Source: Asterias rubens (Eukaryota). Taken from it: a DNA stretch of 64,000 nucleotides. Position numbers and translations under genes: made by a program. Below are positions 10,266 through 62,929 of the stretch, one piece after another. Below the pieces are notes generated by a model, which searched no databases, was not told the origin of the DNA, and saw only the letters and a program-made list of their open reading frames with translations. The stretch is from contig NC_047081.1 of assembly GCF_902459465.1 (NCBI RefSeq), positions 620,001 to 684,000 on the forward strand, in the 5' to 3' direction. Numbering within the stretch: the first letter of the stretch is position 1; every line of letters starts with the position of its first letter.

Positions 10266-10314
10266 GCTACAATCAAAGGACTTTAAAAGGACCATGCTGT
10301 CTTGTCTATAGGAC

Positions 10315-33534: not shown

Positions 33535-34062
33535 TCATGCTGGGCCGTTGAGTCCGGCATACTGACACGCTGATAGAGTTGGTGATTGCCGGACGGGGTA
33601 GCTAAATCCACTCATTGATGTCGAATGTTGCTTGGCTTTAAGGCGAAGGGAGGCAATACTACTCGAGCAAGGCTCCCGGTAGACGTACGGAGAGGCCGGT
33701 ACTGATGCGTACGGGCACGCCGCAGCCCCGGGTGAATTGTTCAGGTTCTGATGGCTCATCACACCGTTCACCGGTGAGGAAGGGAAACTAGAACTCATCG
33801 ACGTCTGAGAGTTGAAACACATGGGTTGGTTTGATACTCCGGCAAGGGGATTGACGGAATTCAGCGACCATGGAAAGCTCTTCGCTCCGAGGGGGTTTGA
33901 GGCGGACTTAGCGGCCCAGTTGTTGTAGGAGTACCCGGAGTAGAGCCCGTCATCGAATGGTTGCATCAAGCCGTTGAATTGAGCGCCGAACCCGTTCTTC
34001 AACTCGTTCATGTGATTCCTTTCTCGTTTACGCCATTTTGCACGACGATTCTTAAACCAAAT
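33535..34062 (-). CDS. Pitx: Pitx last coding exon: homeodomain helix 3, Pitx motif, OAR domain
   Basis: Acceptor TTCTTGTTACAG|ATT at 34063; [14 protein letters not shown] (K50), [39 protein letters not shown] and LSACQY; stop at 33535-33537. Confidence 0.97.
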
Positions 34063-38577: not shown

Positions 38578-38611
38578 GCACCGTTTACTTGGTATTTTCC
38601 CGAAATATGAA

Positions 38612-38690
38612 AGAAATCCCCAGACAAAATTACTCCAGTGGGATTCGAACCCCGACCTTTGCATTGCTAAAGCAGATGTCTTACCACAGA
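38612..38690 (-). mobile_element. tRNA-derived SINE head fragment
   Basis: Minus strand TGGTAAGACATCTGCTTTAGCAATGCAAAGGTCGGGGTTCGAATCCCACTGGAG contains a B-box but no complete cloverleaf. Confidence 0.6.
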
Positions 38691-41575: not shown

Positions 41576-41861
41576 TTAAAGGCACTGGACACCTTTGGTA
41601 ATTGTCAAAGACCAGAACTCTCAGTTGGTGTATCCAATATATGCATAAAATAACAAATCTGTGACAACTTTGACGCAGTAATTTGTCATCGAAGTAGCAA
41701 GAGAATAATACAACCAGAAACACCCTTGTTGTAGAAATTGGTGGGCTTTCAGATTGCTCACAATGTTTTATACTATCAACAGCTCTTCATTGCTCATTCC
41801 AAGTAAGTTTTTAAGCTAACAATTATTTTGAGTAATTACCAATAGTGCCCAGTGCCTTTAA
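41576..41861. mobile_element. Kolobok-like MITE family A, internally deleted
   Basis: TTAA-AGGCACTGGACACCTTTGGTAATT ... AATTACCAATAGTGCCCAGTGCCT-TTAA. Confidence 0.88.
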
Positions 41862-42306
41862 ATTGAACACCGTGGTCAGGGAGGGATGTCATAGTACACA
41901 TGTACTCTGTGCTACTTCAGTGATTTTTATGTCCAGACTTTTTTTTGTAGATTGAAAAGATTGCTGACCTTCGACAAATTGCCAATCCAATAGAAATCGA
42001 TGTAATTTGGATGATTGTATTTCCATATTTCTAGGTAGAGAAGAGTTGCTTGTTCAGACTGTTGGACTTGTTATAAACCATGAAGCCATATTAACTCAAT
42101 ATTCACAGCGAGGACATAGAAACACATTTCGTCATTAAATGCTCAACCACCGCAACATAGAGTCGAACCAGTAACTAGCGTGGTTCCTCATTGGTCACTG
42201 TACATTCTCCACAGTCGTCTAGTTTGACTCTTCACACCATGCTACAACAATCTGTTAAACATCATCAGATACGGCGGCCATGTTGTCTACAAAATAGTGT
42301 CTTCAA

Positions 42307-42512
42307 GCAGCAGTTTAACATTCTGTTTCTGTGTTGTCTTTTACAGCAGTTTAACATTCTGTTTCTGTGTTGTCTTTTACAGCAGTTTAACATTCTGTTT
42401 CTGTGTTGTCTTTTACAGCAGTTTAACATTGTGTTTCTGTGTTGTCTTTTACAGCAGTTTAACATTCTGTTTCTGGGTTGTCTTTTACAGCAGTTTAACA
42501 TTCTGTTTCTGT
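42307..42512. repeat. 36-bp tandem repeat x~5.7, no spacers
   Basis: CAGCAGTTTAACATTCTGTTTCTGTGTTGTCTTTTA repeated head to tail with near identity. Confidence 0.95.
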
Positions 42513-43333
42513 GGAGCATTTTTACTCAAGTCTTGTTTTGGACTCTAGTCTTGCACATGGCGGTATAACAATCGATATCCTTTCACAGCAAATGTCTTAC
42601 TGGTATCAAATCCATCAAGTATAATGTTTACCCAATAAACAATTAACTTTCATAAGTGGTTATTTTCGGTGCTAGTGAACTAGTGGGCATATTTGAAGAC
42701 ATCTATGGCACAATAAGTAGCCTACGCAATGACAGTTCCCTATTCACCTTTTCACTGTGGCTTTTTACGTTCAACTTCCCTAGGGAAGGGCCGCCGTATT
42801 TACTTATCGCGCGCTTTGTAAAAGACAACAGTTAAATAATTACGCCATTACAGGGAAGTCGATTCCTTGTTCCTCGTTTACTGTTATATATTTACACTTC
42901 AAGGAGTTGGTTAACCCCAGTGTTTCTGGTTCACTTCGTAAGCACCCTTGTTTACAGGTTTCATCGTGCTTGTGAGCTACAATGATTAAGTTCACTTATA
43001 AGGCATCTTTAGTTTCACTACCAGAAACATGTACTAATAATAACCACATCATGGTAGAGTAAGATTGGTTCAACTGGTTTAGAATATCACTTCAATTATA
43101 GTGAGGAATTGAATTGAAAATAATACAAGCTAATATTTCAAACTGATGTTGAATCAAGAGGAAATGATTTGATTTGGATCAAATGATATAACATTCAAAT
43201 ATTTAAGATTGCTTTGTTTTCAAGTGATGTCATCCCTACGACGATGGGTTCAATTGGTTCTTAGCTTCTGATGTTCGGATTTCTTTGTCTTGCTACGTCA
43301 CTCATGACAGTTAGTGTTGGGAATGTCCTTCTA

Positions 43334-43765
<432 letters not shown>

Positions 43766-46092
43766 TTAGTCCGGGGTATGTCAAGTTTGAGTGTCTGGAC
43801 ATACAGAGCAAAACACTCATATCACTGTGTCTGTATCGCCGAACGAAATCTTATGACGATGGGCCGGGAAAAGTAACCCGTGTCACATCGGACAATGGAC
43901 AGTTTAGAATTGAAAGGAAAAAACAAGATAACAGTTCAACCAACGTCCACTTTAGAACAAAGTAAAGTGTTGTTTAAGTATCGATAAATAAATGTTGAGG
44001 TTCAGTCTGAAATCGTCGTCACCGATTCGATTTTTTATATCAGTTGGCTACCTATACAAGGTGATATCATTTGGTGTCAGAAAAAAAAATTAAAGTCAAA
44101 AAATAAGTATCTTTAAATCTTATAAATCACTAATTTTGGAATCTGCATTTTCCTGACAAAACTGTTTTTCTTCAGCCAAACGGGAGCTGCTTTTTCATGA
44201 AATTGTTTCAGATATCTAAAAATGGAAGTCTAGAGGATGAGAATTAATTCACCCTAATCCCTCTAAAAACAATGAAAGTTATTTTAAATAATGAGTGTCT
44301 GTCTCGAGCGCTGATATCCAGCAAGAAAAACCTGAAGATAATTCAAGATTCGTTTCATTTTGTTTCCTGGATCATTACTAATCTAAAGTGAATTAAATTA
44401 ATTTCAGTTATATAAATACATTTTAAAATTATTCACATATAAAAGTCAACAAACGTATACTTCTTTAACTCCAAACCTGTTTCTAAGCATAACAAAAATC
44501 AACCATCAATATAAGACCAACTTAAGATTTAACTTTTCCAAAACGTAGGTAATATATTTTTCCTCTGTTATGTAACAAGTCGTATGAGAGACAAATTTGT
44601 CTAGAATTTGACTCAGTGACGTCATTATATGTTTTTATTGCAATAATATAAACCAACCCGAAGGGGCAGAGAAAGGTCGATCTGAAATTGAATTTTAAAT
44701 GCTATTTATTCCCTTAATTCCAGGACGTCCATCGATTTAATTGGCTCTGTTCGCGGACTTAACTCTGGCTTATTGAAAGACGTAAACATATTTATAAAAG
44801 TCTCCAACAATTCCACTCAGACGACAATGTAAAAAAAGTTGAGTGGATAGAATTCTAAATATAAGTGCGATTATACCTGAACCATAAGGGGGTAGAAGTT
44901 TGGGTGGGTTCTACCTTACAGCAAACCTGTAAAATTGAAAACATTCTCCGTGCGTTATGTGACATTTCCGATCCCTGGATTTCCTTGTGTTTTTGAGGTA
45001 GCAATCGCCCCCAGACTAAGGGTGCACTTGCAAGACGCATTTTGTGAGGAATATGAAATGGGACGGCGACTGTGAACAAGTTTTTTGTTTTAAAATATAT
45101 GTATTCAGGGAAACATATATTAGATTTCTTTAACAACAGTTTTCTTAAAATAATAACAATAAATTAATTCAAAGATTTACTGCCGAGATATCCATGAAAC
45201 TACCCCCTTTTTAGTTTATATTCGTTTAACTGCCGGTGCTCAAATTATAGTATAATATATTGGTATCACTGTTGTATCACTGAAAGGGTGACTGTTAGCT
45301 GTTGATAAACTCTATACAGTAACTTATTGGGTTCATATTCTTTTGGGGAAATTAGTTGACAAGCAATCTTCAAGAAGAATAACACTTTTAGATTTCGTTT
45401 TACAAATAATTTGCCTGTGGGTTTGTTAGACAAAACAGTATGCTGGTGCAACCAAAAAGGGTTCCAAATGCATTCCGTGCAGTTGTTTGATTCCAAATAA
45501 ACTGATTTGACCAAATACCCTCGTGTGAGACAGTCTTGTAGTATTAGTAACGCTCGTCTTAGATCCTCGATTACCGGAAGCAGACATCCCCTAACAGTTA
45601 TCATCGACAGTTAAGTTAGAAGGTAAATTCAATATCAGATACTACTGAAAATCTGACACTTAAATCTGCAGACCATTCACGATAAGTCACTCTGGGCTTG
45701 AGAACATTTCAATGTTTCGACGAAATATAAAGGAACCCAATATCAGATATTATTAATAATTGGACACAACAGTCTGCAGAGCATTCCTAATAAATCACTT
45801 TGAACTGTTGAACTTGTCAACCTATTGACGAAGTATAAAGGATTTGTGTTCATTTATAAGAAGAGCGGAAATGCAATGTTGAATTTCGTCATTTGAATGA
45901 TTTCTTGTATTAATGCAATACAATACTGATAACCGAATTCAACAACTGTACAACTGTCTACCTTCTTGTTCTTTGTTACTGGGGTGAAGTTACAAACTAC
46001 AGGGAAAACTGGCCGGGTAAATGTGGAGCTAATTTTCATGAAACATCGACTAGATCAGGATCTGAACCTGTAGCCTCCGTGTTGACAGTATA

Positions 46093-46483
46093 TTAAAGGA
46101 ACACATTGCCTTGGATCGGTCGAGTTGGTCTTTGAAAAGCGTTTGTAACCAAGTTGTTCTAAAATGCATATGATTAGAAAGGTTTTTTTAAAGTAGAATA
46201 TAATGATGCACACAAGTATCACTCGAAATTGCGTGGTTTTCCTTTTACCTCGTCGACTAACACGGTCGGCCATTTTTGAGAGTCACATTTTTGACTCCCA
46301 TAAATGGCCGACCGTGTTAGTTCGCCAAGTAAAAGGAAAACCACGCAATTTCGAGGCAAATTTGTGTGGATCATTGTATTGAACTTTGAAAACATCTTTC
46401 TAACCATATGTATTTTATAACAAACGGTTACAAACGCTTTTTAAAGACCAACTCGTCCGATCCAAGGCAACGTGTTCCTTTAA
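46093..46483. mobile_element. Palindromic Kolobok-like MITE family C
   Basis: TTAA-AGGAACACATTGCCTTGGATCGGTCGAGTTGGTCTTT ... AAAGACCAACTCGTCCGATCCAAGGCAACGTGTTCCT-TTAA; arms run almost to the centre. Confidence 0.9.
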
Positions 46484-46951
46484 CAGAGCGATGGGTTGGT
46501 TTTGATAGTCCTGTATTACATCGAAAACAGGCAGCGGTTTTAAGTGATGGAATCAGTCTGTATTCAATATAGCTGCTCCTTAATTTATAAAATCAGCAAA
46601 ATATAAAATCACACCATGAAGAAACAAGTGGAAACTCTCGTTACGGACGCTAGAGAAAGCAACTAAAAGGGTGTTGTGTGCAATCAAACACTTAATGGTA
46701 GGGCAAGTGGTGGTAAACTGTTTTATAATTTCGATTAATTTTAGTTACGGACGCTAAAGAAAGCAATAAAAATGTGTTGTGTATATTAGAATCCACGTAT
46801 CACACAAGATCGCACCATGCATAACAAGTGGAGCAAAGTTACTGATGCTTTAGAATTAGCAACACAAAGATGTTGGGTACAATCCAAACATACAAGGTGG
46901 GCAAGTGGGGGTAAATTGGTTGGAAATTACGCTGACAAGGGTTGTTCATAC

Positions 46952-47147
46952 CATGTGTGTCCGCGGATAGTCTAGTACAGCCAAGAGAAGACACGACGCT
47001 AGGGGTAGTCCGGCTGTACCTTGATACCGATGATTCGGCTCCAGCAGCGGCGGTCATACTGATCAGAGCCCCGGTCGGATTCCTCGAAGACGACTCGGCA
47101 CTCACAAGGTCCTCTAACGTAGCAAGTGGATCACTGAGTCCGTTCAT
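46952..47147 (-). CDS. Pitx: Pitx proximal first coding exon (MNGLSDPLATLEDLV..., 65 codons + 1 nt)
   Basis: ACC-ATG context with an in-frame TAA two codons upstream; Ser/Thr-rich N-terminus; donor CATG|GTATGA is phase 1 and matches the homeobox exon acceptor (G+AA=Glu). Confidence 0.8.
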
Positions 47148-47699
47148 GGTTTACTTATCAATCAGGGGAAGAGTCCGGAACAAGATTGGATGCGGTGTGT
47201 GTTTATCCGGTTGAGTCCGGTTGTTCCTGCTTGCTGTTGTTGATGACGATGAGCCCGAAATGGATTTACCTAAAAATGATGATTAGGTCTATGTGACGAA
47301 GCCGAGGAGAAAAGTGGGACGGACTGACGGGAATCCGGGGGGACAAACACGGAGCCTAGCAGAGTCCAACCAGATTTGAAAGCTGTGTGGTGACAGGAAC
47401 AGCCTCGTGTGTTGTGAGCCTATCTGAAGACTACTCACCCGGACTATCCAAGTTTAGTGTGAGGATAGGACTGGGTTGAAGCAGAAATCCTGGTTTGGAT
47501 TTAGGTTTAGCCGGATTTGGTTTCTGCTATTCAGCTTTTGGTTGATTCAATGAAGAGAGCTCCCTACCAAAGCTTGATGTCTAACCCCGTAGCGCGTTGA
47601 TGCATTTATCCACCTTCACACGGGAGGAAATCTGCTTAAGGGACGGCACCGTCAGCTCGCTAAAACAGCCGCAGCGTCCACTAAACCCGGCCCGTTATC

Positions 47700-47905
47700 A
47701 CCTTTGCACAGGGACTGCTTTTAAGACCAGCGATATAGAGAGACACTCCTTACAGATAATAAAGTAGCTCAATGGACGGTACCTATTGAAGGGATTGCCT
47801 TTTTGGTATAGACAGTTCTTAACTCATTCACTACGCCGTAGTGGTGTATCAGTGAGTGACGTCACGGATGAGGTGGGGTGGGCGTGGTTTAGCTCGACCA
47901 ATGAC
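47700..47905 (-). promoter_or_regulatory. Putative proximal Pitx promoter
   Basis: TGACGTCA at 47857-47864, GGGGTGGGCGTGG GC/KLF box at ~47875-47887, CCAAT at 47898-47902, TTAAAA TATA-like on the minus strand at ~47720. Confidence 0.55.
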
Positions 47906-49428
47906 AGACTTGGGATCCCGTGTCAGTTTAGTGACATCCCCTCCTCGATCAAACTGCGCCATTTAATTCTCATCGCAGGTGAATTTCTACAAAACTCTGG
48001 TAATTGTCTTTCGGTTGGAGGTAGGGGGGGCATATCCCGGGACTCGTATCAATTTTAATATTAGCTCTGGTTGAAATTGTACAAGTTTTAACTTTAAATG
48101 ATGTATCATAGTTCCAATTGTGTTTTTAGGCTGCGTAGACTATTGTGACTAAACCATTTATCTGTCTATCTATCTATCTTTCTAAAATGTTAAAGTTTGA
48201 ACAGTGACAAAAAATTGTTAAAAAAAAAAAAAGACTATATTTTTTAGATTGAATGCTAGAACAAACAGTAAGCCGTAAGCATTTCATGCATACTACTATC
48301 TTCATAAGCTTTGTGCTTAGCAGAGCCCTTAGTGGTAGCCTTACTTTAATAATAACATGTGTGTTGAAGTGGAAGCACATAATAATAATAAATGGAGACA
48401 CTCTATGTTTTGAGGTAGAATTACCAAAATAGATGAATAGATAATAAACAAAACGAAGCTCATTATGAACCGAGTATTCCTCATTGAGTTTTATATTACT
48501 AAGTAAAAGTTAAGACATTGAATGAAACAAAACGGCCTACGTTACAGCGCTAAAATATCTTGAAATAAGACAAATTCAGACAATTGTTATGATAAAAGTT
48601 TAAATTGCTTTATGCAAGAAACAATGCCCATTTAAACAAAAAGTAAAGGTTGAAACGTGACTGTTAATATTACTCCATTTTCAAAGGGCAGCTCGTTGAT
48701 TTGTCTAGATCCATTTATTCTAAGGTGTATTTGATTATTTTTTTTTTAAACAAAGACACGGCTTTAATTACAATCAAATTGTTGAATTAAATTATTTAAT
48801 AGCAAGTCAGGATGGGTGTATCACTCCAAATTTAACCCCGTCTTATGTGAACTACAAACAGTTTAGAGTCAAAAAGTCACCACCATTCGTGTTGTGTGTA
48901 CATGTATCACGCGACAACTACCTTATACAATTGCGTTTGTTAACACGATCAGTGTTGTTACACTGTACGGCCAAATAAATCAAAGTTTACAACAGATTTT
49001 CTTTTTAGAGTACGATTAGTGTGTCCATGCAAATGCCTCTATCGTTCTCCATGCTTGGGAAGCTTGCGTGAGAAGTCTTTTAAAGGAATGTGTAACTCTT
49101 CTGTGCAGAAGTTGTTGCTCTGACAAAAGTATTAAGCATGATTGATAATATTCTCAAAATGAGATTTTAGTTTACTATGTTATGATACACTAATGATTAT
49201 TAACGTGAACAAAACCTCAATGTTGTGTTAAGCCTGTGTAACTTGGGTTGATCTTTTTGGGGTGAAGATTATCTGCAAACGAAATAATGTAAATCCTTGC
49301 TTGATTTGAGGAAATCAAAACCAGGATTATCAACAAAGAATATCAAAGCTTGTTTTTTTCGCCCAACCATTTGTATTTTAAATTAAATAGTAGTTCAAGG
49401 ATACCACCCGAAATAAACTTAACTTATA

Positions 49429-49722
49429 CAGGGAAAACCCAAATGGGAACTCAACTTCCATTCAACATTCAAGGCTAATGTATGAGATGGGATTGGAACC
49501 GGGGTCAACAGAGGTGAAATACAGGGACAGAAACATGAAGGTTTTTGACCCGTAGATCCGATACTTTGAAAATACGTAAAGATATTGAAAAAAAAAACTG
49601 TTTTACCAGGGAAAACCCAAACGGGAAGTAAAGCACCAATCCACATTTCAATGTTCTGGCCTGAGGTGTGATTCGAACCGGGGTCAACAAAGGTGAAAGA
49701 CAGTCAAAGAAACATGAATGAT
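49429..49722 (-). mobile_element. Two tandem diverged tRNA-SINE fragments, 178-bp spacing
   Basis: CAGGGAAAACCCAAA at 49429 and 49607, each followed by GATT(C/G)GAACCGGGGTCAACA.AGGTGAAA (B-box on the minus strand). Confidence 0.7.
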
Positions 49723-49954
49723 TCACCTATAGGAGGCCTAAAGCCAGGTTCGTACTTTTGTGGTCCTGCTGGCTGGTACAGTGTTTAAAACCGTCTCTAT
49801 TTATGAAATATGGACAAATTATTATGGACGTACGGGCAAGTGAAATGACACGATTACTGCTTTGTTTGTATATCTTTTCATGCTTGTAAGGGTTTAATGA
49901 AACTCCTATTTACGTTTTCAGTTGTTTTATACTTTGCGGCATGTGAATTGGCTT

Positions 49955-50022
49955 CTTGCTTTACTTCTGTGAAGCACTTTGAGCGTCTTTTAGGCGGATT
50001 CTGGTGCTATATAAACACTATT
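49955..50022 (+). mobile_element. L2-type 3' tail fragment
   Basis: GTGAAGCACTTTGAGCGTC...GGTGCTATATAAACACTATT. Confidence 0.45.
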
Positions 50023-52677
50023 CAGTATGTCATGCAGGTTGGTCACTGAAAAGGTTAGGACAAAACATTACGGTCATTAAGAAAGGATAGCGAAGGTGAA
50101 AATAAATAAACATAGAGCTAACAAAATAAACACTCTTTCAGATAATCTGATAATCATCTGGAGTAATTAAGACCACTCCCTACTGATTTTGTCTTCTCGA
50201 AAATAAACCTCATAGCACTTATTTTATACTGAGCAGTAGTCAATACAAATGTGCTATCTGTAACTACACACGAATCGTTTTACTGAGTTGAATTCAGCAA
50301 TCCCAGTCGATCAAACCGAATTGTGGTTTATTTCCATGGCGTCATTCCTACTCCAACGTCAATGAAATACTTTACCTAGATACATCCTAAAAACTAGTTC
50401 AGCACAAATCCACTTTTTCATACAAATCGCCTATTTTTCCAGCAAAACTGGAACGAAGCTTATGCTGAAGATTTGGCCAATTTGTTTACTGGATTTCCCG
50501 GATCGAACGATGCCTCGTTTCCTTTTAGTCGAAGGATTCATTTCAAATCTTCACTGCTCTTCCTCTAAGCCGTTGCATCGAAATTTGATAATGTCGCGTA
50601 CAGGTAGATTGAAGGTAGGTAGAACTAGATAATGGAGCCCGGTTTTCGCTGTAGATAAATCTCGCAAACCTGACTTGATCTTGTTTGCCGCTGGATGAGA
50701 GCGTCCAAGCTCCAGGGACGATCGCTTCAAACAAAATATGAGCCGGAGCGGTGTTTACTTGGTTTCGTGTCATTTTTCCCGCGCTTTTTCCGGTGTATAA
50801 TTAATGGCGCGAAAGAAGAGAGAAATGCAAAACATTGGCTTAGAGGTATGCACGGAAGGTTTACCAACCAAACAAAATCGGATGCATGCTCATCAGACGT
50901 GGATTAGCGGCGCTCGAAATGGAAATTGCATTTCGGGGGTCCAGCGAGACAGCGCGCGCGAACAGCGGGCCAAAGCACGAGCCTTGAGGGACCCGTGTGC
51001 CCATGAATTTCAAATAAGCCAGAGCTTTAAGAAGATGGCTTAGTGGTATCATTCGCTTGTGTCATGCATGTATCTCTATTCTAAAAGGATCAAGTAGGAT
51101 TTACAGGCAATTCCACGTTCTCTCAGGATTTTTTCGGGAAGGGGAAGGAAAAGAAGTAAAGTGTGGGAACATAACGTATATGAACTGAGGTGGAAAAACT
51201 TAAGCATGTTTGTAACGCGGAGAACAAACCACTAGAATCGCGGTAGCTCGAGTCAGTGTTTTTGCGCTGCTTTGCCCCCGTAATCCGCGGCGGTCCCCCT
51301 GACGATCGCAACCCGGCCTGAAATTAAAACTCACAAAATCAAGCCGTTGATGTTGAGAAAACAGCCCAGTAGAGGGAAAACACAGCGGGGAACGAAAGCC
51401 AATTTCTTTGTTGTCACTCAATATTTTGCTGGTAAGCCTCATGAATTCACGGGGCTAAATATTCGTATGCTTGCAAAGCCTAGCGTAAGACCCGTATGCA
51501 TTACGAACGGGGTAGAAATGATATGCGAGATGCTGCATGGCGAAGAATCTACTCTGGATTATTTCATGGCTTCGTGGAATAAAATGAAGCTATTCTCTTT
51601 CAGTTGTAATATTTTCTAAGGCGTGGGTTTTTTCTTTTCCACGGTCTTCGTCTTTTAAATGATTCTTCATCGGATTATGCTATAATTATTGGAAACCAAT
51701 AAACCATTTTTGTAAACAAAAAAGGGTAACGTGAAAGATTTGTCCTGAGTAAAGGATTTAGTTGTCGATCTGACGGACGATTTGGAGCGACCAACACAAG
51801 ATTGTAGTTTGCTCTTTAATCAATCCCGCCTTCGTAAACTCTGATATGGATAATGGGTGACTAAATAAATGTTTATTCTTGGGATACTAGAAGTGAGGTC
51901 GAGGCTAATGTATGCAAAAATCTTCACCTATGGGTCTTTGACTTCTGCTTTCCCATTTCCATGTCATCTGTTCTTCTTTTTCTTCATTGAGGTCCTTTTG
52001 ATGTTTTTTTCGTAAAATTATGTCCGTAAAAATATTTGTGCAGATACATAATAAATATTAAGGGGAAATGTACATTTGATTACTTATAAGCGTGGAATTT
52101 ATCTAGCTGTCTATTAAAAGGACATCCCGGATTTGTGTTTTGGAAAAAATCGGGTAGAATAGTAAGACATTTTGAAGATTTCATTAGTTCAACAGCAACA
52201 GCAAACAGCAGAAACAGTGACAATCTAACCAAATTAATGCAAACATTTATAAACGGAAATTATTAATTACAAAATACGTTTGAAGCAAGATTGTGAGAGT
52301 TAGCGAGTGCCAACATCTCAAAAAATAGTTAAAATATCAACATTAAATAATAATTTGGGAGGCTAACCATCCTTACTCACGGCTGATAAGTTGATATGAA
52401 AAGAACGCAACCTCAAATTGAAAGTTGTCCATATAGGGGGTACACACCAAGTCAGGAGAAAAACCACTTGTGTCATAAACAGGCCGCAGAGCACAACTAT
52501 AAAATAAGTATTGCCTTAGACGGGACTCGAACCAAGGGCCACATGTAGTTGGCCCGGAGAAAAAAACCTGGCATAGGAAACGTCCAACGCACACTCTGGT
52601 ATCATCGTATGACATAGGACGGGAAACGAACCAGTTGTGAGAGATGAGTGCTTTACGCACCCGCATGTAACCTTGCC

Positions 52678-52977
52678 CTTGGTATACAAGCAATGGAGAG
52701 CCATGATAGTATAACAACATTGTCAAAAATTGCTCTGAAGTAACCTAGTTTTTATGAAGAGGTAATTTATCACTCAAATAATAAAATACTTCAGATGAAG
52801 CCGTTTATAATGCGTCTGAAAGCACACAAAGTAATGCAACAATGTTTTTTTTTGTTCTTTCATTATTCTCTTGCAAATTCAATAACCGATTGAAAGTTAA
52901 CATTTTCACTGGTTTGTTGTTATGCATGAGTTGTGATACACCAAGTGAAAACACTGGGTTGTGTCCAGTGCCTTGAA
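52678..52977. mobile_element. Kolobok-like MITE family A, left end not recognisable
   Basis: Body aligns to 8730-9050; ends GTGTCCAGTGCCTTGAA. Confidence 0.75.
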
Positions 52978-53700
52978 TAACTTAACTCATAATACCTTGT
53001 CCTCTGCTCGCAATCCCCTTCCCTCGCAAAGGCTCTAAATCAGTAAGCTTCAGCACTCCAATCTCATCCATCCCAGGAACAAACGCCGCTGCCTCTACCA
53101 CCATAGTAGTCTGCATGATTCAACCGCTTAAACCTAGCGGCTAAATTTCCTGATAACAACTCGGTAAAAGAGGTTGGAGTTTTGGAGAGAAAACTTGCCT
53201 AGAAACCTTCGTTCCCACAGATTTGTCTAGAATTAACTCCCGATTATATTTTCGCCACCTTCCACAGCATGTAACCTTCTGCCAACTCGTGAGAACTCTG
53301 GCTTGGTCTGTCTTCCCTCCTTTAGGGCGTATAGGTGCACCACAAAGGTGATTATTTCACCATAGATATCATTTTTCATTCTTCTTTTCTAAAGAAAGCC
53401 CGAAGAATTGACAAATGTTCTACTCATGGTCGACACGGTTGGAGGTCCTTGCAGAGCCCCAGAGACCATTGTTACGTATTGAAGACCAAAGATACAATAG
53501 GTAATAGAAAGAAGAAAAATGATCGTTCGCTGTGTCATCTTCTAGTGACAAATATTTCCGATAAAATTCACAAAATGAGAAAATAAAATTAGCTTTTGCA
53601 AGCTTCTTACAACCAACAGGACCAATGGCATAAATGCAAAGCGAAAAATTAGTAGACTGGCGTTTTGACCCGGTGACCCTATATCTGAGCATTTCTCGAA

Positions 53701-53741
53701 GCCTGCGAGAAACACTCTTCTTAAGGGTCGAAACGTCAGAC
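53701..53741 (+). ncRNA. Degenerate Penelope-type minimal hammerhead motif
   Basis: CCT-GCGAGAA-A-CACTCT-TCTTA-AGGGTC-GAAA-CGTC-AG; roughly 75% identical to the 58765-58805 motif, including downstream flank. Confidence 0.45.
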
Positions 53742-53928
53742 ATTTCACTATTGTAAGATGTTTGTAAATAAGAAATGAATGTCTACTAAGATTGGTTGTA
53801 TAACAGGTAAGATGTCACTTATTGCAAAGACTTGGCCAACGTTTGAAAGTAATTCTTGCTGTACTTTTCTGGTATAATCTAAGGCTGAAAAAAAATCTAC
53901 TATTAGGCTGCGTGGGCCACCCTTATTT

Positions 53929-54273
53929 AAACAGTATTGTCCAAGGCCCACACTTCATGTATCACAACTTCTATATCAAATAACAAACCTGTGGAAATTT
54001 AGGCTTAATCAGTCATCGGAGTCGGGAGAAAATAACGGGAAAACTCACCCTTGTATCTGCACGTTTCGCCTTGTTATGACATGTGGTTAAAATAAATCCG
54101 TAATTATCGATATCGAGAATTGATATTGTTTTACTGTTTTCTCAAAAAGGAAAGCATTTCATGGAATAATATTTCAAGAGAAGTCTTTCACCACTACCTT
54201 CTGTAAACCCTGTAAGTTATTTGTAAATCTGTGAACTTTTTTTTTCTGTACCGAAAGGGTCCAATGGCTTTAA
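53929..54273. mobile_element. Kolobok-like MITE family B, reverse copy, left TIR degraded
   Basis: Reverse complement of 18056-18400; ends CCGAAAGGGTCCAATGGCT-TTAA. Confidence 0.85.
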
Positions 54274-55943
54274 AAATGGTTTAATTAAAATTAAATGAAA
54301 CATGCGCAGAACAATACATTTTGTTTGACTCAACAGTAGCTTTTCACAAAGCATGTGTTTTTATACGGACCCGCACGTAACCGTGCTCATCCTTTACAAA
54401 GCATGTCGTTAAAAGAAAGGGAAAATTAAAACGTTTTGATCGATTGTTTGTCTGTCTGAGCAGACAAAGAAAATGCCTGCAACTTTTTCAGTTGGAATAC
54501 ATTATAAATAAATCGATTTTAAAAATGGAAAATTTCAGCATCGATGACCTAGAAATAAACAACCTTTCCACAGAAAGGAAAAACCAATCCCGGTTTATGA
54601 AACTGAATCAGCATTCAACGTTTGAAAGGAGTAATTTAATTTCACGAGTTTAGCATTCACTGGTCAAAAAAGATCATTCAAATTATTAGGTCGCAAAGAT
54701 CATTTATATATGGGAATTTATGCATTGCATGGTGAGGTAGCAATCTATATTTGGTTTGCGGTAACACCATGTGTGTATTTACTTGCAGTGTAGATTATGT
54801 TCTTTTGAGAATTTGTCATGCTTTATACTTAAACTACAGCGGAGTAATTTGGGGGGAAATCGGGAGACTTCTCAATTTCGCCAAAAAACAGAAGCAAGAG
54901 GCTCGTCAACCATTTAGTTTCATAAATTGCTAGTATAGGATACTAGGCATTGAATTTAAAAAGTTCATCGTGGGTTTCTACTACAAAATCCTACCCATAA
55001 GGACTTTTATTCTTTACAAACTTATGGTAAAATAACCTTAGTTTTGAGACCAGAAACCTCGAGGTCTGGAAGTCGAGTAAGGGCACACTTGGTGCTGACA
55101 GACAACCGGAGGTTGCGACCGTTCATACCCGTAACCCAACCACGACCAACACGCTCAACAATTACCGCTTGACAACAATCACTTCTCTATAGAACACTAA
55201 CAGAAGAAACCCTGTGTCGGAATGGAGACAATTTGCCAAAAGATTTCCCAAAGTAATTGAGAGGAAAAGAATGGACTTCCCAGTCCTCTATCTGGAAACA
55301 TAAATACCCCACGCTGGTGGCTCACACACAACGGTGGAATAGTAAGAGAAAGGCACCCAACCAGGCCTGGCCTTGCTGGTATGGTCCGATGGGGGGCTTC
55401 GGTGAGAAACACGGGCGAGGTCATTCTGCCTAAACACGCTGGAATAACTCCCCTGGTAAACGGTCGCAACTAACAAGTACAATGCCTCTAATTGGATAGG
55501 TGTGGACAGGGATTTGAGGATTTTCAAGACGGCGAATGACAATTTATATTGTTATGATACGTCGGACTTGCTAATAATGCATCCTACAGTACACTCAACT
55601 CGGCAGCAATTTAAAGAAAATATTATATCACTTTTTGTAATAGTACTAATTATGGTTATGAATATACTGGTAGACTTAATCCCACAGAAAATATCTACTT
55701 TCAAATTATGTATAATTTTTTAGGGTGGAAGCTTATGATTGAATCCCTGTAATATGTAATTGTGCAATCATGTATAATCCATATAAGTGTAGTACATGCC
55801 CGCAGGTACTTGTCAATTAGTTTGTTCATATCTGTATGTTTAAATTAGTTCTTGTTAATACCATGTGCATTGAGAAGGGTTGTTGTAGCCTCCATGTGGT
55901 ATGGTCGCAGACGGCATCCTTTCTATTGTCTACAAGCTTTGCG

Positions 55944-56240
55944 TTGAAAGCCACTGGACACCTTTGGTAACTATCAAAGACCAGTATTCTCACTTGGTGT
56001 ATCTCACCAATTTGAGCTCAATTGGTCGTTGAAGTTGCGAGAGAATGAGGAAAAAACACCCTTGTTGCAAAAAAAGTGCTTTCAGATGCCTAATAAAATG
56101 CTTCAGGCCTGAAGTCTTTTAGTATTGAAGTGAGAAATTATCTCTTTCGATAAAACGACAATACACTTCAGGAGCAATTCCGCACAATGTTTTATACTAT
56201 ATTATCAGCAGCTCTCCATTGCTCATTAAGTTTGAGAATT
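55944..56240. mobile_element. Kolobok-like MITE family A, right end lost
   Basis: Starts AAGCCACTGGACACCTTTGGTAA; body aligns to other copies until GCTCTCCATTGCTCATTA. Confidence 0.75.
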
Positions 56241-58764
56241 AATTGACTCTTCCTCCAAAACATTGACAGAAATCCCTGTAAAAAGAATTCCTTACTGACA
56301 CTTGACCAAAACCAATTCATCCCAGATGTATCGAATTATGCTCTGCCGGTTCACTTGTCTTCAAAGTCAACTCCCAATCCATCCAAATCTTGATATTGCT
56401 AATTTTGACAGACTTATCGGTGGTGAAATTTCCACAAATCCTTGTCGACAATAATAATATTTTGTCTTTGTTTAAAGGATTCACAGCTGAAACTACACCC
56501 TTGTAACCAACTATTATCACCGTAAATAATAATTCTTTAAATCCAAGTCAAAACCATGTTCATCTTTTGTCGAGGTTTAAAAGATTCAACGATCGAAACT
56601 CATGAATCCCCTTCGATCCAAGAGTACGAGATCTGGTTTATGTTGGGCGCATCGTCTGATAAATCCGACGGGTTAATCTGCCGAAATCGCTCCGGTCCTG
56701 TCCCAGGCTTAGCCCTGGCTTAGCCCGGCTGGTGCCTCCACATCCTTGGTAAAATCTTATCTGAAGAAAGGGCACTTATTCACACAAATTTAATCCCCTG
56801 CGGTTTTCTAAATTGCCCACTACAGAAGTTATGTTTGTGTGGGGTTGGTGGCTGGAACCACCCTGCGCGGACGACATTTCTCGACAACACTCACAAGTGT
56901 CATTTTTTGCCGCCACAAAAGTTCTGCGTTCGATCAATGTCTTGTTTCAGCCACTTACGAACGATTTGTTGGCGGTTTATTTTGCCTTGTGATAAGTCCG
57001 AAAATAACCATTACGTTTTTCTCTGATGATAAGGCTCGAATAACCATTACGCTGTTCCACGTTTGAAGGCAATAACTGCCAATCAGTTTGTTTTCATCGA
57101 TTTGAAATGATTTTAAAGGAATTTATAAATAAATTTAAAGGTCGAGTACACAATATAGAAACTGAGAATGTGGCTGTTTCGTTACATAGGGCTCTTGGCT
57201 GAAACATGTCTTACTGGAGACGAGATGAACAAACCGCATGAAACGTTGAGAGAATGTTTGAAGTTTTTGCTCTACACGGAACCCTCACTTAATGGGAAAA
57301 AAAATAACATATAATGCCCTTTTTCAAATGTGTTTGTAGAAAAAGGGTTTCTTCATTACATCAAACCAAATTACTTTTTTTTATCTGCTACCTTTTTTTT
57401 AGGTTTTGTTGAAATTCATTTTAGGGTGAAATCCACAGCTTCAAATCTCACTCAAAAATCATTAACAGTCGTTCGTTGGATATGACCTTCAAGAATATTT
57501 GGGTTATTTTTCACTTATATTTTTTTGTGGGGGGGGGGTCCTTGTTTACGTCACTTGGTATCCATTAGTAACTGGATTCATATTTCGCCTCGGGGTATAA
57601 CGGATGTTATGGTAACTATCAGAAAAAATGTTTACAATAATCGTTTGTGTTTGTTGTTTACCATTCTGTGTTGCAGTTGACAGATCAGATAGGGGGGGGA
57701 TTGTTTTAGATAGAGAGGGGCTTGACAGCATACATGGGTTCTATCACAGTTTTGGTTAAAAAAAAAATAAGTTTGTGTTGTTCTCGTGTGTTTCTGGGTG
57801 TTTATTCTGATCCCATGTCGGGATTAAGATCATTCTTACAAAGGCACTACTGAGTCTCTAAACTGGTTGTAATTGTCGCTTGGTGTAGTTGTAGTCCTAC
57901 ACATAAAGAAAAACACATCAACTTGGGGTTAAAGTAACCTGCTTTCCACACATAGAGTGGATATACTCGAAACAAACAAAAAACGATTATGAAAGGTATT
58001 TAAGAAAACGAAGACATGAAACAATAAGAAAGCTGTCAGTGAACGTAACAGTGACGTAAAATTGCGCCCTCTATTGGTTGTTGTTTCTTTTGTTGGACAC
58101 GCGCTCACGTATTAAACAATTTGAAGAAAGAAACGCTGAAGTTAAAATGTAGATAAAAAGTGCCTAATTATGAAGTTATTTACACTCATTCACTAATCCC
58201 AACAGAGCTCGATGCGAAAAGAGTGACCTCAGAGAGACGAAATATCCTAGTAAAATTACTAACGCTGATGAACATGAGTCTTTATTTCCTAAAGAGTCAT
58301 ATGCTATCATGTTTCACCCTAACACCGATGTATATTACAAAACTGTATACTCGGTCCTGTCCCCGCGGTTCTGTGAACAAAACTCACAGGGACAAGCACG
58401 AATTATGTTACTGAAAACCTCCCCCCCCCCCTCATAACATTAATCTATTATTTCCATAGTGCAAACCCAGGTGCTTTCGTGTCTTACCATAAAGAATATA
58501 CGAATAATACAACTTTCAAAAAGCATTATTCTATACAACAATGTCATGTATAGAATGTTGCTTTTTGAAAATTGAATTATTCGTGGTTAGAAGAATACAC
58601 CCAATAGATTAATAAGACTTCAAACCCATTGAATATGTGTCATTGTGTCTTATTTTCACACGGTTACAAAGTTTAGATATATAACACTCCATTTGTCGGC
58701 AAACCTTGTTCTAGTTTGTGTGCTACTCATCAGTAATACGCTGTAGTGTGAAAAATAGTTTAAT

Positions 58765-58805
58765 GTCCTGACGTTTCGACCTGAGCAGAGTCTTTCTCAA
58801 AGGCT
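58765..58805 (-). ncRNA. Penelope-type minimal type I hammerhead ribozyme motif with U3-A8 covariant core
   Basis: Minus strand CCT-TTGAGAA-A-GAC(TCTGCTCAG)GTC-GAAA-CGTC-AGG: stem I CCT/AGG, stem II GAC/GTC, palindromic ACGT stem III, GUC cleavage triplet. Confidence 0.6.
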
Positions 58806-58819
58806 AAAATTACAACAAA

Positions 58820-59625
58820 ACAAACAAGAACAGATATACATTTCGTCGCAGACCTGTCGCCACAAGTATTTGCAAAGCTTGTAGCTTCGGTATCGCTTGG
58901 AAAGCCCCAATACCCTGTTCTCCACCTCCATGGACCTGGTTCGAATCCCACCTCTCAGACAAAAAGCATTGTATCAATCCCCTCCCCCATCAACTGTCAG
59001 AGTTTACGATCCTCCCTCCCAAATCAACAACTAAACATTTTCTTCGTAGACCTGTCGCCATCTGCAAAGCTTATAGCTTCTGTGTATCGCTTGGACAGCC
59101 CCAATACCCTGCTCTCCACCTCTGTGGACCTGGTTCGAATCCCACCACAAGCTGAAGCTTCGCATTCAATCACTCCCAACATCAGTGTATAGGATTCTCC
59201 CTACCAAATCAACAACTAAACATTTTGTCGCTAACCTGTCGCCACGAGTATCTGCAAAGCTGATATAGCTTCTGCATCGATTGGAAAGCCTCAGCATGTT
59301 GCTCACCTCCGTGGACCCAGTTCGAACCCCAACTCAGTAAAGCATATCTTTGTACCACTCTCCCAACCAGGCAGTGTCTGTGTTTAAAATTCGCCCTCCC
59401 AAATCGACAACTGGACATTTCTTAGCAGACCTGTTGCCATGCTGCAACGCCGGATAGCTTATTTACCACTTGGAAAGCCTCAGCATGCTTTTCACATCCA
59501 TGTGCTCAGACTCGAGTCTCGCATTGCATGAGTCCCCACCAAGCCTCCCTCTCAAATCATCAACTAAACATTTCTTGGCAGACCTGTCGCCACAAGTATC
59601 TGCTAAGCCTGGTAGCTTTGTTTCA
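58820..59625 (+). repeat. Tandem array of ~150-200-bp units containing a tRNA-SINE head (about 4.3 units)
   Basis: CATTT...AGACCTGTCGCCA...GCAAAGCT at ~58838, 59036, 59221, 59416 and 59569; GGTTCGAATCCCA B-box in units 1-2 and a degenerate form in unit 3. Confidence 0.85.
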
Positions 59626-61346
59626 TCACCAGACACAGACATCAATAAATATAAAAACAAATTGGTCTTTGATCAGAGCTTACAGGTTTTAATTAAGACT
59701 TAGGGACGATCCACCGGACTTAAAGCCATCGGCTCAACTTTAACGAGATTTGAGACATTATCCGTGAAATTAAATTATTTTAAAAAGACATTAGGTATCC
59801 TGAAAATGGTTTGGAAATTATAATGGCATACCCGTAGGAATTGGAATGAACATGTTACGCTTGATTGATTCTGTGTCCAATTGTTAGTGTGCGATAATAA
59901 TGCGGGTTGCCTTTGTGAGATGGAACATGGAAGGTTTTTATGCGTGGGAATTTAAAAAGAAGAAAACAAAATTGTGTGAAGTCAACAGTGTATTTAACAT
60001 GTATATTGCGTGTCTGTTCCTGAAATGTTTTGATCGGCAGACTTAACCTTTAGGTTATTTGACAGTTTACATTCCCTCCTTAGTATTGCCTTCTTATCTT
60101 TTTTATGTGTAGTTTTTATGAACTTTAGGGGAGAAATAAAAAAAAAATATAAATAGCACTGTGAGACCGTACTTTTTCATAGTAGTTTTTAGCGATTTCG
60201 TTTTTCAGTTCTAAATATTAGTTTTTTTTACTTTTCTGACTCGTTGCAATTGTTTGTGTGGTGTTTCATTTGTATATTTTTTTTATATTTCGATGTTATC
60301 ATTTTTGGTATTATTGTTTATTTCGTCATTTACCTACTTACTTGTTTAATTATATGTTGTTGGTTTTTTTACTATTCATTTATTCATTTTATTTAATATA
60401 TAGTTATTTATTAAATAAGTTAATATTTTTAAAATGCTATTTTGCTTATTGGCGCCAAACATGTTCCTTTGACATTATTTTTAACTATAAAGTTTGTGAA
60501 AATCAGGCTCGGATGTACGAACTTACAAACAAAAGTGTAAATTCGTCACAATGTTTAATTGAAAAACTCGACAAAATCATTACTAATTTGTTGTGTTTTT
60601 ATTATTTCTTTAATATTTTTCCTCTTTGGAAGGTGAAAAAAAAACTACTTACTTTACGATTCGCCTTATGTAGCTTTGCCAGACCATTGCAATTTAAAAA
60701 GCAATTAAAGGCCGTATGGTCTCTAAATTGAAGATTTAATCGGCAACTATGATCTCTCTTTTAGGGCTGAGCTCCATTTTAGTCTTTTCATTCTCTGAAG
60801 GCGCAAATAAATTATTCCTGCATTTATTCACACACGAAGGACTTGTGTGGGTTTAGTTTTATGGATGGATTTTCAATTGGAAAAGATTATGTTGAACCGC
60901 GTTGAACTTTAAGGGTAGAGTACTATTTGATCTCAGTGAATAGAAACAAATCATCATTTGAAATCAATAATATAGACACTGTAAACTGGGGATATTTTAT
61001 TTAAAAAAATTCCTTTTGAGTAATACTTTCGTTCTTTTAAAATGTCGATGATTACGATCCTTTAAATGTAGATAATACAATGAACTTAACCTGTCCTCTC
61101 GCGTTTGTTAGTCATCGCCGACAATCCGTAGCGAATTATGTCCATGCACGAAGAATAATCCCTAATAGGAATACACAATCTTAGAATAGAAGCGTTGGGG
61201 GATACGTTTTTCAATTTCAAATTTTTGATACGAAAAACTGATACCTTTTCCCACAATCACATACATTTCTAAGTGGAATGGTTCTCAAAATGCTTTATCC
61301 TATTTAAAACCTGCTAGGCTTCTTTCTATCCAATAGTCTTATAGAC

Positions 61347-61433
61347 TCGAGTTGAAACCAACGGTTCTTTTCAGAACCACCCCAACTCATTAGAGATAGT
61401 CATTACATGGTGTTACCGCAAACCTTTCAATAT
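61347..61433 (+). mobile_element. Penelope-like pseudo-LTR fragment (same family as 28837-29079)
   Basis: Near-identical to 28993-29079. Confidence 0.8.
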
Positions 61434-61609
61434 CTTATAGACTGCGCAAGTCTCGCGCATATCGGGACGCGAAAGCACATCAAACGAAAAACTTCATTCT
61501 TTCTAAAGTCAAATCTTTGCTTTGAATTATAGTTAAAATGAATTTCAATAGTGATTACCAAACATACTGCAAGATGTGTGAGTTGAAAATGATTGGGCTC
61601 AAAACTCAC

Positions 61610-62045
61610 CACTTCTCTTTTCCATTTTGGTTTTCGAAAACTCTGTTAACTGTTCAACAGCCGTGCCAATATGGTCACTCAGTTGCTTTCCAAGGTGCTC
61701 CTCCATTGGACTCAACGCGGACCTACCAACTCCATTGCTCGATTGAGGGCGCTTTGCTACTTCCCCAGACGACACCGAACTCGTTTGGAATCCAGTGTAA
61801 GGGGGAGCCGCGCCCCATGAGGCGTTAGACGTCGTTTCTCCCTGGTAGTGGAACGCGTCTTGGTTGGTGTGTTTCTTGGGGCTGGAGCTACTCATCTTCA
61901 GGCAGCTCTCTGGGTTGGGTGAGCCCTTTGGTGATGGGAGAGTTTTCATTCCGTAGAGTGAGTAGGTGGGGTTCATCTGATCTGAGGTCAGTCCGGGTGT
62001 CTTGGGCTCCAAGTGACCCATGGATGAATCGGCAAGTCGGAACAT
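61610..62045 (-). CDS. Candidate distal alternative first coding exon of Pitx (145 codons + 1 nt, Ser/Pro-rich)
   Basis: Longest non-repeat ORF outside Pitx; T-rich tract and AG acceptor at 62054-62053 upstream of the ATG; GTG|GTGAGT donor at 61609 is phase 1, in frame with the homeobox exon. Confidence 0.5.
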
Positions 62046-62264
62046 TATTCTCCTTCAAGACAAAAAAATCCAAAAATATTACAATCAACTGATAATAAGC
62101 TGGTTGATATTGCACGAAGCTAATAGATGCGGGTGACTACATAACCGTATCCATTTATTGGTAAAGGATTCGAAAGCTAGAAACTTTTATGATCGGTGGT
62201 TACACTCGTTTGTTTCGACACCTTACTCGGGCACCCCTATAGTAAACAAAGATGTTATAGATAT

Positions 62265-62650
62265 TTAAAGGCAGTGGACACTATTGGTAATTACTCAAAA
62301 TAGTTATTAGTATAAAACCTTTCTTGGTGACGAGTAATGGGGAGAGTTTGATGGTATAAAACATTGTGAGAAACGGCTCCCTCTGAAGTGCCATAGTTTT
62401 CGAGAAAGAAGTAATTTTCCACGAATTTGATTTCGAGACCTCAGATTTAGAACTTGAGGTCTCGAAATCAACCATCTAAACGCACACAACTTTGTGTGAC
62501 AAGGGTTATTTTTCTTTCATTATTATCTCGAAACTTCGACGACCGATTGAGCTCAAATTTTCACAGGTTTGTTATTTTATGCATATGTTGAGATACACAA
62601 ACTGTGAAGGCTAGTCTTTGACAATTACCAATAGTGTCCACTGGCTTTAA
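62265..62650. mobile_element. Kolobok-like MITE family A
   Basis: TTAA-AGGCAGTGGACACTATTGGTAATT ... AATTACCAATAGTGTCCACTGGCT-TTAA. Confidence 0.92.
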
Positions 62651-62929
62651 CATTTCAAATCTTTCTGGTCTAAGGTTCGAATCCAACCAACAAGAGTTGT
62701 TGCTGTTCCGGTGGACAATCCATATTAACGGTAACACGAGACGTGACAAAGGAAGGAACTCGCACAGGAAATTATAAATTAAAGAACCTGTGTTTAGACA
62801 AGTAGACTTCACCAAGTCCTTCTGCGTAACTGTGTTGTGATTGACACGACCACAATTAGCATCACCTTTACTAGTCATTGGATTAAGTGTAATCTTAAAG
62901 GATTTATTCAACCACAGTCAGGCGACTGA

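What the first reader, a model, noticed from the sequence alone, without database searches (positions are those of the whole stretch)
61610..62052. Unannotated distal exon that splices in frame to the Pitx homeobox: alternative N-terminus
Seen: a 145-codon Ser/Pro-rich frame (MFRLADSSMGHLEPK...KMEKRS) bounded by a T-rich acceptor and a GTGAGT donor placed 1 nt into a codon, the same phase as the homeobox exon acceptor. An ~17.9-kb intron would give ~393 aa versus 313 aa. The proximal exon has an in-frame stop before its ATG, so the two would be mutually exclusive first coding exons. Known: vertebrate Pitx2 (a/b versus c) and ascidian pitx use distal and proximal promoters with distinct N-termini. 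Inference: the same two-promoter design in an echinoderm.
Basis: partly seen in the sequence, partly recalled or inferred. Interest (0 to 1): 0.7.

Follow-up and report, generated by a model that had tools for sequence, protein, structure and literature searches.

The report
Starfish Pitx distal exon, already annotated
The flagged stretch is a real, transcribed and conserved alternative first coding exon of a starfish (Asterias rubens) Pitx homeobox gene, giving a 393-aa protein instead of 313 aa, but public annotation already lists exactly this isoform, so it is ordinary.

Summary
On the minus strand, 62052..61610 is a 443-nt exon with an AG acceptor, an ATG at 62045, 145 codons and a G|GTGAGT donor in phase 1. 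Joined to the homeobox exon (43677..43460) and the last exon (34062..33535), it gives an open 393-aa frame. The proximal exon (47147..46952) gives 313 aa.

The window is Asterias rubens chromosome DNA. My 393-aa product is letter-for-letter RefSeq "pituitary homeobox x-like isoform X1" (XP_033644073.1/074.1), and the 313-aa product is isoform X2. So "unannotated" is wrong.

Independent support:
- RNA-derived contigs from four runs end exactly at the exon's two splice sites. One continues into a non-coding exon 4.6 kb further upstream.
- The frame, acceptor and donor are kept in A. amurensis (393-aa models, same exon layout) and two more distant sea stars (dN/dS about 0.27; indels all multiples of three).
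- The tandem Pitx paralog 41 kb downstream has the same distal/proximal design.

I did not see the donor's partner exon directly; it rests on the RefSeq models and on phase.

The proximal N-terminus (MxxLxxPLSTLEDLV) is the widely conserved one. The distal one evolves fast and was found only in sea stars.

Verdict: real, mechanistically as proposed, already known. Low interest.

The parts
61610..62052 (-). Distal alternative first coding exon of Pitx (443 nt). It has 7 nt of 5' UTR, an ATG at 62045, and 145 codons plus 1 base. It encodes the isoform X1 N-terminus.
   Evidence: ORF and signals. RNA contigs X4 rec17 and X5 rec25 lie on 61610..62051 with 0 mismatches and run on elsewhere at both ends; X1 rec2 and X2 rec9 stop at the same acceptor. 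Residues 1-145 of RefSeq XP_033644073.1 (P0173) are identical.
62053..62095 (-). Polypyrimidine tract and AG acceptor of the distal coding exon (..tttttggatttttttgtcttgaag|G).
   Evidence: Sequence. The AG is kept in A. amurensis, L001 and L005. Contigs break here in four runs.
61602..61609 (-). Donor GTGAGTTT following the phase-1 G at 61610.
   Evidence: Sequence. G|GTGAG is conserved in A. amurensis, L001, L005 and in the paralog's distal exon. Contig pieces X4 rec17 and X5 rec25 start exactly at 61610.
43678..61609 (-). 17,932-nt intron removed in isoform X1. It contains the proximal first exon, which X1 skips.
   Evidence: Follows from the exact identity of the spliced translation to P0173. 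The A. amurensis locus L007 has the same layout, with a 19.7-kb intron. I did not see the junction itself in reads.
46952..47147 (-). Coding part of the proximal alternative first exon (65 codons plus 1 base; donor G|GTATGA). It encodes the isoform X2 N-terminus MNGLSDPLATLEDLV.., the widely conserved Pitx N-terminal motif.
   Evidence: P0003 (RefSeq isoform X2, 313 aa) is identical to the conceptual product. The motif is shared with urchin, brittle star, crinoid, hemichordate and amphioxus proteins.
43460..43677 (-). Shared exon encoding homeodomain residues 1-46 (acceptor ttttccag|AA, donor AGG|GTAGGT).
   Evidence: Pfam Homeodomain E=3.8e-23 on P0173.
33535..34062 (-). Shared last coding exon: homeodomain residues 47-60 ([15 protein letters not shown]50), C-terminal region with the OAR motif, stop TGA.
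   Evidence: Pfam OAR E=7e-10.

Best explanation
The stretch is the distal alternative first coding exon of an Asterias rubens Pitx gene (RefSeq 'pituitary homeobox x-like'). Transcripts that begin at a distal promoter beyond the window carry one or more non-coding exons. They then splice into this exon at 62052, start translation at 62045, and leave it at 61610. They skip the proximal first exon and join the homeobox exon at 43677. The result is the 393-aa isoform X1. In it, a 145-aa Ser/Pro-rich, fast-evolving N-terminus with no recognisable domain replaces the 65-aa conserved PLSTLEDLV-type N-terminus of the 313-aa isoform X2. The homeodomain (K50) and the OAR region are identical in both isoforms. 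Shown here: the exon's signals, its transcription and splicing at both ends, coding constraint, and exact identity with the annotated isoform. Inferred: that the donor's partner is the homeobox exon, that two promoters are regulated separately, and that the N-terminus modulates activity or partners, as in vertebrate PITX2 isoforms.
For: The exon's signals and phase match the homeobox exon, and both products are open frames of 393 and 313 aa. P0173 (XP_033644073.1/XP_033644074.1, A. rubens isoform X1, on a contig of the same length as the window's, 12,664,855 bp) equals the conceptual distal product exactly; P0003 (isoform X2) equals the proximal product. RNA-derived Logan contigs support the splicing. 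X4 rec17 (548 nt) and X5 rec25 (777 nt) cover 61610..62051 with no mismatch and continue elsewhere at both ends. X5 rec25 continues into a non-coding exon 4.6 kb upstream that ends in CAG|GTAGGG. X1 rec2, and X2 rec9 from another species, stop at the same acceptor. A. amurensis has 393-aa models and the same four-exon layout. The only hits to the exon peptide in 1.84 and 5.8 billion proteins are sea-star ORFs at 62% and 49% identity with the donor kept. dN/dS is 0.26-0.28 and indels are multiples of three. Conservation is confined to the span from acceptor to donor. The tandem paralog has a distal exon of 150 codons with an acceptor and a phase-1 G|GTGAGT, and also has X1 (393 aa) and X2 (309 aa) isoforms. 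There is a hint of separate regulation: some runs hold one first coding exon and were not listed for the other. X5, X6, X2 and X3 hold the distal exon; X15, X12 and X13 hold the proximal exon.
Against: I did not see the 61610/43677 junction directly. The link therefore rests on RefSeq/Gnomon models, on phase, and on the same model in related species. One X1 contig (rec1, 510-639 of L003) crosses the donor unspliced, so some unspliced RNA or DNA is present in that run. The run kinds are guesses; that they are RNA is inferred from the spliced contigs. Neither transcription start was mapped. The difference in run holdings is weak evidence, because the tool warns that a run not listed is not a run that lacks the sequence.
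Confidence: 0.9

Rival explanations
1. The exon is transcribed and spliced, but its donor mainly joins some other exon, such as a non-coding or frame-breaking one. In that case the 393-aa protein would be an annotation construct rather than a real product.
For: The partner of the donor was not seen. Gnomon models can chain compatible exons.
Against: Coding constraint on the frame up to the donor, with phase and the G|GTGAG kept in four species and in the paralog. Independent gene models with the same join exist in A. amurensis, Acanthaster and Patiria. No other conserved frame lies between 61.6 kb and 47.5 kb.
Confidence: 0.06
2. The exon belongs to a separate upstream gene or a non-coding RNA that merely overlaps the Pitx locus.
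For: Further exons lie upstream, outside the window, and the peptide has no Pfam domain.
Against: No protein other than sea-star Pitx long isoforms and bare genomic ORFs carries this peptide. The same exon sits upstream of Pitx in A. amurensis. The paralog repeats the arrangement.
Confidence: 0.03
3. It is a chance open frame in intergenic DNA.
For: None beyond its low-complexity composition.
Against: Spliced RNA contigs, purifying selection, and exon-shaped conservation.
Confidence: 0.01

Closest known systems
RefSeq Asterias rubens 'pituitary homeobox x-like' isoform X1 (XP_033644073.1, XP_033644074.1) and isoform X2
   Same: Identical: the 393-aa and 313-aa conceptual products equal P0173 and P0003 residue for residue.
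   Different: Nothing in the protein. My reads evidence adds that the distal transcript has at least one further non-coding exon 4.6 kb upstream of the coding exon.
Chordate Pitx2a/b versus Pitx2c (vertebrates) and Pitxa/b versus Pitxc (ascidian, amphioxus), as summarised in PMC8377849
   Same: A distal transcription unit with extra 5' exons and a proximal first exon both join the same homeobox exon and give different N-termini. The sea-star proximal N-terminus (MNGLSDPLATLEDLV) resembles the amphioxus isoform X3 N-terminus MDTLNDSLSLEQLV.
   Different: The distal N-terminus shows no detectable similarity to anything outside sea stars, nor to the paralog's distal exon. Homology of the distal units is therefore unproven. 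Left-right or other isoform-specific expression is untested in sea stars.
Tandem paralog in A. rubens (XP_033644070.1/071.1 isoform X1, 393 aa; isoform X2, 309 aa) and Patiria miniata 394-aa protein
   Same: Same orientation and the same exon plan. The distal coding exon is about 150 codons, starts MF+F, and is entered by an acceptor and left by a phase-1 G|GTGAGT. The proximal exon starts MNSISEPLSTLEDLV.
   Different: The distal peptides are not significantly similar (BLASTP E=0.85).

Membership tests
Pitx (paired-like, K50 homeodomain with OAR) | Homeodomain present | tested here: met
   Pfam PF00046, E=3.8e-23, residues 174-230 of P0173.
Pitx (paired-like, K50 homeodomain with OAR) | Lysine at homeodomain position 50 and the paired-class intron between positions 46 and 47 | tested here: met
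   Counting from QRRQRTHF gives I47 W48 F49 K50. The exon boundary is ..ARVR|IWFKNRR.
Pitx (paired-like, K50 homeodomain with OAR) | C-terminal OAR motif | tested here: met
   Pfam PF03826, E=7e-10, residues 348-366.
Pitx (paired-like, K50 homeodomain with OAR) | Closest relatives are named Pitx proteins | tested here: met
   Hundreds of 'pituitary homeobox' hits from echinoderms to vertebrates.
Pitxa/b-Pitxc type two-promoter design | Two alternative first coding exons joined to the same homeobox exon | tested here: met
   Both conceptual products equal RefSeq X1 and X2 exactly, and both exons end in phase 1. I did not see the distal junction itself in reads.
Pitxa/b-Pitxc type two-promoter design | Separate transcription starts, with the distal one carrying extra 5' exons | tested here: inconclusive
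   Distal transcripts continue into a non-coding exon 4.6 kb upstream. Neither start was mapped. Runs that hold only one of the two exons give a hint.
Pitxa/b-Pitxc type two-promoter design | Proximal N-terminus homologous to the Pitxc-type N-terminus | tested here: inconclusive
   The motif MxxLxxPLSTLE-LV is seen by eye in echinoderm, hemichordate and amphioxus X3 proteins. It was not tested statistically or against vertebrate Pitx2c.
Pitxa/b-Pitxc type two-promoter design | Distal N-terminus homologous to the chordate Pitxa/b N-terminus | tested here: not met
   phmmer of the 145-aa peptide against 1.84 billion representatives found one sea-star ORF only. The word-based search found two.
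Pitxa/b-Pitxc type two-promoter design | Isoform-specific expression (proximal form asymmetric) | not testable with these tools
   Needs in situ hybridisation or staged, annotated RNA-seq.

The most novel reading that the evidence does not exclude
The distal/proximal Pitx promoter pair of sea stars is homologous to the chordate Pitxa/b-Pitxc pair. It would then date to the deuterostome ancestor, and both tandem sea-star paralogs would have inherited it, with the distal N-terminus evolving too fast to be recognised. No paper I could find describes this for echinoderms.
Probability: 0.3. Interest if true: 0.4.

Novelty: already known. Interest (0 to 1): 0.15.

Why it matters
Little for discovery: exactly this isoform is in RefSeq for A. 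rubens and A. amurensis. It has modest value for evo-devo. Sea stars have three clustered Pitx genes, and at least two of them keep a distal, fast-evolving N-terminal exon alongside the conserved proximal one. That mirrors the chordate Pitx2a/b versus Pitx2c layout. Isoform-specific probes could therefore test whether only the proximal form responds to Nodal-dependent left-right signalling in an echinoderm.

Tried and rejected
- The single read-laying run was limited to 6,000 letters and could not hold both the distal and homeobox exons. The loose-end table was swamped by an abundant repeat at window 62.2-62.8 kb, so the letters beyond the donor were not shown.
- The look-up of encoding contigs for the exact 393-aa protein failed once and then found nothing on record.
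- The exon peptide alone could not reach full-length relatives in the search for homologous proteins because of the length rule. I got there in two steps, through the last exon and then through P0003.
- Pfam found no domain in the distal peptide.
- BLASTP of the distal peptide was not significant against the paralog's distal peptide or Acanthaster's. The alignment shows only MF+F and a few scattered positions.
- The 5' boundary of the upstream non-coding exon is unresolved. X1 rec8 matches up to L003:5800 and then diverges, but the nearest AG is at 5797-5796.
- The 105 nt of X5 rec25 between the two placed exons was not located.
- Literature searches found the chordate isoform work but nothing on echinoderm Pitx isoforms.
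- Earlier scan notes held nothing relevant.

Full report
**What is in the sequence**

On the minus strand there is an open frame of 148 codons, 62045..61599, starting MFRLADSSMGHLEPK.
- Seven bases upstream of the ATG lies an AG preceded by a T-rich tract (..tttttggatttttttgtcttgaag|GAGAATAATG).
- After codon 145 the sequence reads AGT G|GTGAGT. A donor here leaves one base (G, 61610) of a split codon.
- The Pitx homeobox exon starts at 43677 after ttttccag and needs exactly one base to complete its first codon, so G+AA = Glu.
- The proximal first coding exon (ATG 47147) also ends G|GTATGA in phase 1 at 46952. It has an in-frame TAA two codons before its ATG.
- The last exon runs 34062..33535.
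The intron is 17,932 nt.

**Identity of the locus and of the isoform**

The window is G000:C21:620001-684000 of a 417.6-Mb assembly. Contig C21 is 12,664,855 bp long.

A search with the last exon returned P0003, a 313-aa protein named 'pituitary homeobox x-like isoform X2 [Asterias rubens]', on a contig of that same length. A second search with P0003 returned a 393-aa cluster. Its members are:
- A. amurensis XP_071808306-309;
- P0173, 'pituitary homeobox x-like isoform X1 [Asterias rubens]', XP_033644073.1 and XP_033644074.1.

P0173 equals my conceptual distal product exactly, and P0003 equals the proximal product exactly.

P0173 carries a homeodomain (E=3.8e-23) and an OAR motif (E=7e-10). 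Homeodomain position 50 is Lys. The first 146 residues match no Pfam family.

**Transcription and splicing**

Runs that hold the exon were found, and four were laid on C21:681001-687000 (L003; locus position + 61000 = window position).
- X4 record 17 (548 nt) and X5 record 25 (777 nt) match 61610..62051 with no mismatch and continue at both ends with sequence that is not adjacent DNA.
- X1 record 2, and X2 record 9 from a different species (3 mismatches), stop at the same acceptor.
- The one-base offset (62051 rather than 62052) is what an aligner gives when the first exon base G can also be read as the G of the upstream donor.
- X5 record 25 places its last 134 nt at L003:5663-5796. That exon ends CAG|GTAGGG. 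A further 105 nt lie between the two pieces and were not placed.

The flagged exon is therefore an internal exon of a transcript that starts at least 4.7 kb further upstream, outside the window. It is the first coding exon, not the first exon.

These spliced contigs also show that the runs are RNA. One X1 contig (L003 510-639) crosses the donor unspliced, so some pre-mRNA or DNA is present in that run too.

The letters beyond the donor (96 nt in X5 record 25) were not printed. I therefore did not see the partner exon directly.

**Conservation**

HMMER against 1.84 billion representatives found one relative of the 145-aa peptide: P0001, 62% identical. It is a bare ORF on a 1,070-bp contig that reads through the donor (..KTKMEKKPGEV). 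The word-based search added P0002 (49% identical..KMEKRPGEL), also a read-through ORF.

DNA alignment shows that similarity starts at the acceptor and fades after GGTGAG. The AG acceptor and G|GTGAG donor are present in A. rubens, A. amurensis, L001 and L005. Against L001, dN/dS is 0.26-0.28 at dS about 0.6. Third codon positions change most, and all four indels are whole codons.

The A. amurensis locus L007 has the same order:
- distal exon 9994-10436;
- proximal exon ending at 26590;
- homeobox exon 30123-30340;
- last exon 39835-40362.

Acanthaster planci has a 383-aa isoform starting MFQFADPA. It also has a 430-aa isoform in which the frame extends upstream of that Met, and a 321-aa isoform with a third N-terminus. 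Its distal peptide is barely alignable with that of Asterias. The distal N-terminus is thus constrained between near relatives but evolves fast.

**The paralog and the wider picture**

Searching the genome with P0125 shows a tandem paralog on the same strand:
- distal exon C21:611928-612377;
- homeobox exon 595667-595894;
- last exon 588199-588720.

A third Pitx gene lies on the other strand at 525-533 kb.

The paralog also has a 393-aa X1 isoform (MFKFDNRR..) and a 309-aa X2 isoform (MNSISEPLSTLEDLV..). Its distal exon is entered through ttttcccaagcag| and left through AAT G|GTGAGT in phase 1. This is the same plan as in the window, although the two distal peptides are not significantly similar.

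The proximal-type N-terminus (MxxLxxPLSTLE-LV) recurs in sea urchin, brittle star, crinoid, hemichordate and amphioxus X3 proteins and in further unnamed transcript-derived Pitx proteins. It is the old one. The MF+F distal type was seen only in sea stars.

**How it most likely works**

Two transcription units share the homeobox and C-terminal exons.
- The distal unit starts beyond the window, carries non-coding exons, enters the flagged exon, skips the proximal exon and joins the homeobox exon.
- The proximal unit starts just upstream of 47147.
- The DNA-binding and OAR parts are the same in both. Only the N-terminus differs: 145 aa, Ser/Pro-rich and domain-free, versus 65 aa and conserved.

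By analogy with chordate Pitx isoforms (PMC8377849; PMC2330153, title and abstract), the main consequence is probably separate transcriptional control, with a possible effect of the N-terminus on activity. That part is inference.

There is a weak hint of separate control.
- Runs X5 and X6, and X2 and X3 of another species, hold the distal exon but were not listed for the proximal exon, or held next to none of it.
- Runs X15, X12 and X13 show the reverse.
- The tool warns that a run not listed is not a run that lacks the sequence.

**Comparison with what is known, and verdict**

The gene meets every Pitx membership test I could run. The layout matches the Pitxa/b-Pitxc design described for vertebrates, ascidians and amphioxus. 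Homology of the distal unit is not supported by sequence.

I found no paper describing Pitx isoforms in echinoderms. Because the exact protein is in RefSeq for two Asterias species, the finding is already known. It is a correct reading of raw sequence, of low interest as a discovery, and a reasonable starting point for isoform-specific expression work.

Noticed in passing
G000:C21:525000-687000 (window = 620001-684000): There is a three-gene Pitx cluster. The window's gene and a tandem paralog lie on the minus strand; the paralog's distal exon is at 611928-612377, its homeobox exon at 595667-595894 and its last exon at 588199-588720. A third Pitx gene lies on the plus strand (homeobox exon 525172-525408, last exon 532430-532954). 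Both minus-strand genes have the distal and proximal N-terminal exons.
   Followed up: partly
L003:5663-5800 (= C21:686663-686800, 2.7 kb beyond the window's end): This is a non-coding upstream exon of the distal Pitx transcript, with donor CAG|GTAGGG. Its 5' boundary is unclear: one contig matches to 5800 and then diverges, while the nearest AG is at 5797-5796. A further 105 nt of the same RNA contig were not placed.
   Followed up: partly
window 62200-62911; also 38255-38844 and 41372-41653: An interspersed repeat family lies just upstream of the distal exon, with ORF fragments such as ..DTIGNCQRL.FTV.VSQHMHKI.NL and ..CAFR.LISRPQ.LNLRSRNQIR.KLLL. It has k-mer depths in the millions in all four RNA contig sets, and it swamped the loose-end and joint tables.
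   Followed up: no
window 42191-42568: A tandem repeat lies in the intron between the homeobox exon and the last exon. It reads as repeated QQFNILFLCCLL in one frame.
   Followed up: no
L006 (GCA_014845345.1 contig JACSEG010043412.1, 1096 nt): A contig filed in a genome assembly of another sea star carries the proximal, homeobox and last Pitx exons joined without introns (86-89% nucleotide identity to the window's exons). It could be cDNA in the assembly or a retrocopy. Contig L001 from the same assembly carries the distal exon with intron-like flanks.
   Followed up: partly
P0004, P0178 (Acanthaster planci); P0017 (S. purpuratus); P0031 (Glandiceps); P0128 (amphioxus X2): Other deuterostome Pitx genes are annotated with further alternative N-termini. 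Acanthaster has a third one (MVRCSGLIV..) and an upstream extension of the distal frame. The S. purpuratus protein starts MSHRIAAF.. instead of the PLSTLEDLV type.
   Followed up: no
window 61510-61639 (L003 510-639): One contig of run X1 crosses the distal exon's donor unspliced. This suggests pre-mRNA, intron retention or DNA in that run.
   Followed up: no
window 58765-58805: An earlier first-stage note (s1-151418) places a minimal hammerhead ribozyme here. The site lies inside the 17.9-kb intron of isoform X1. I did not examine it.
   Followed up: no
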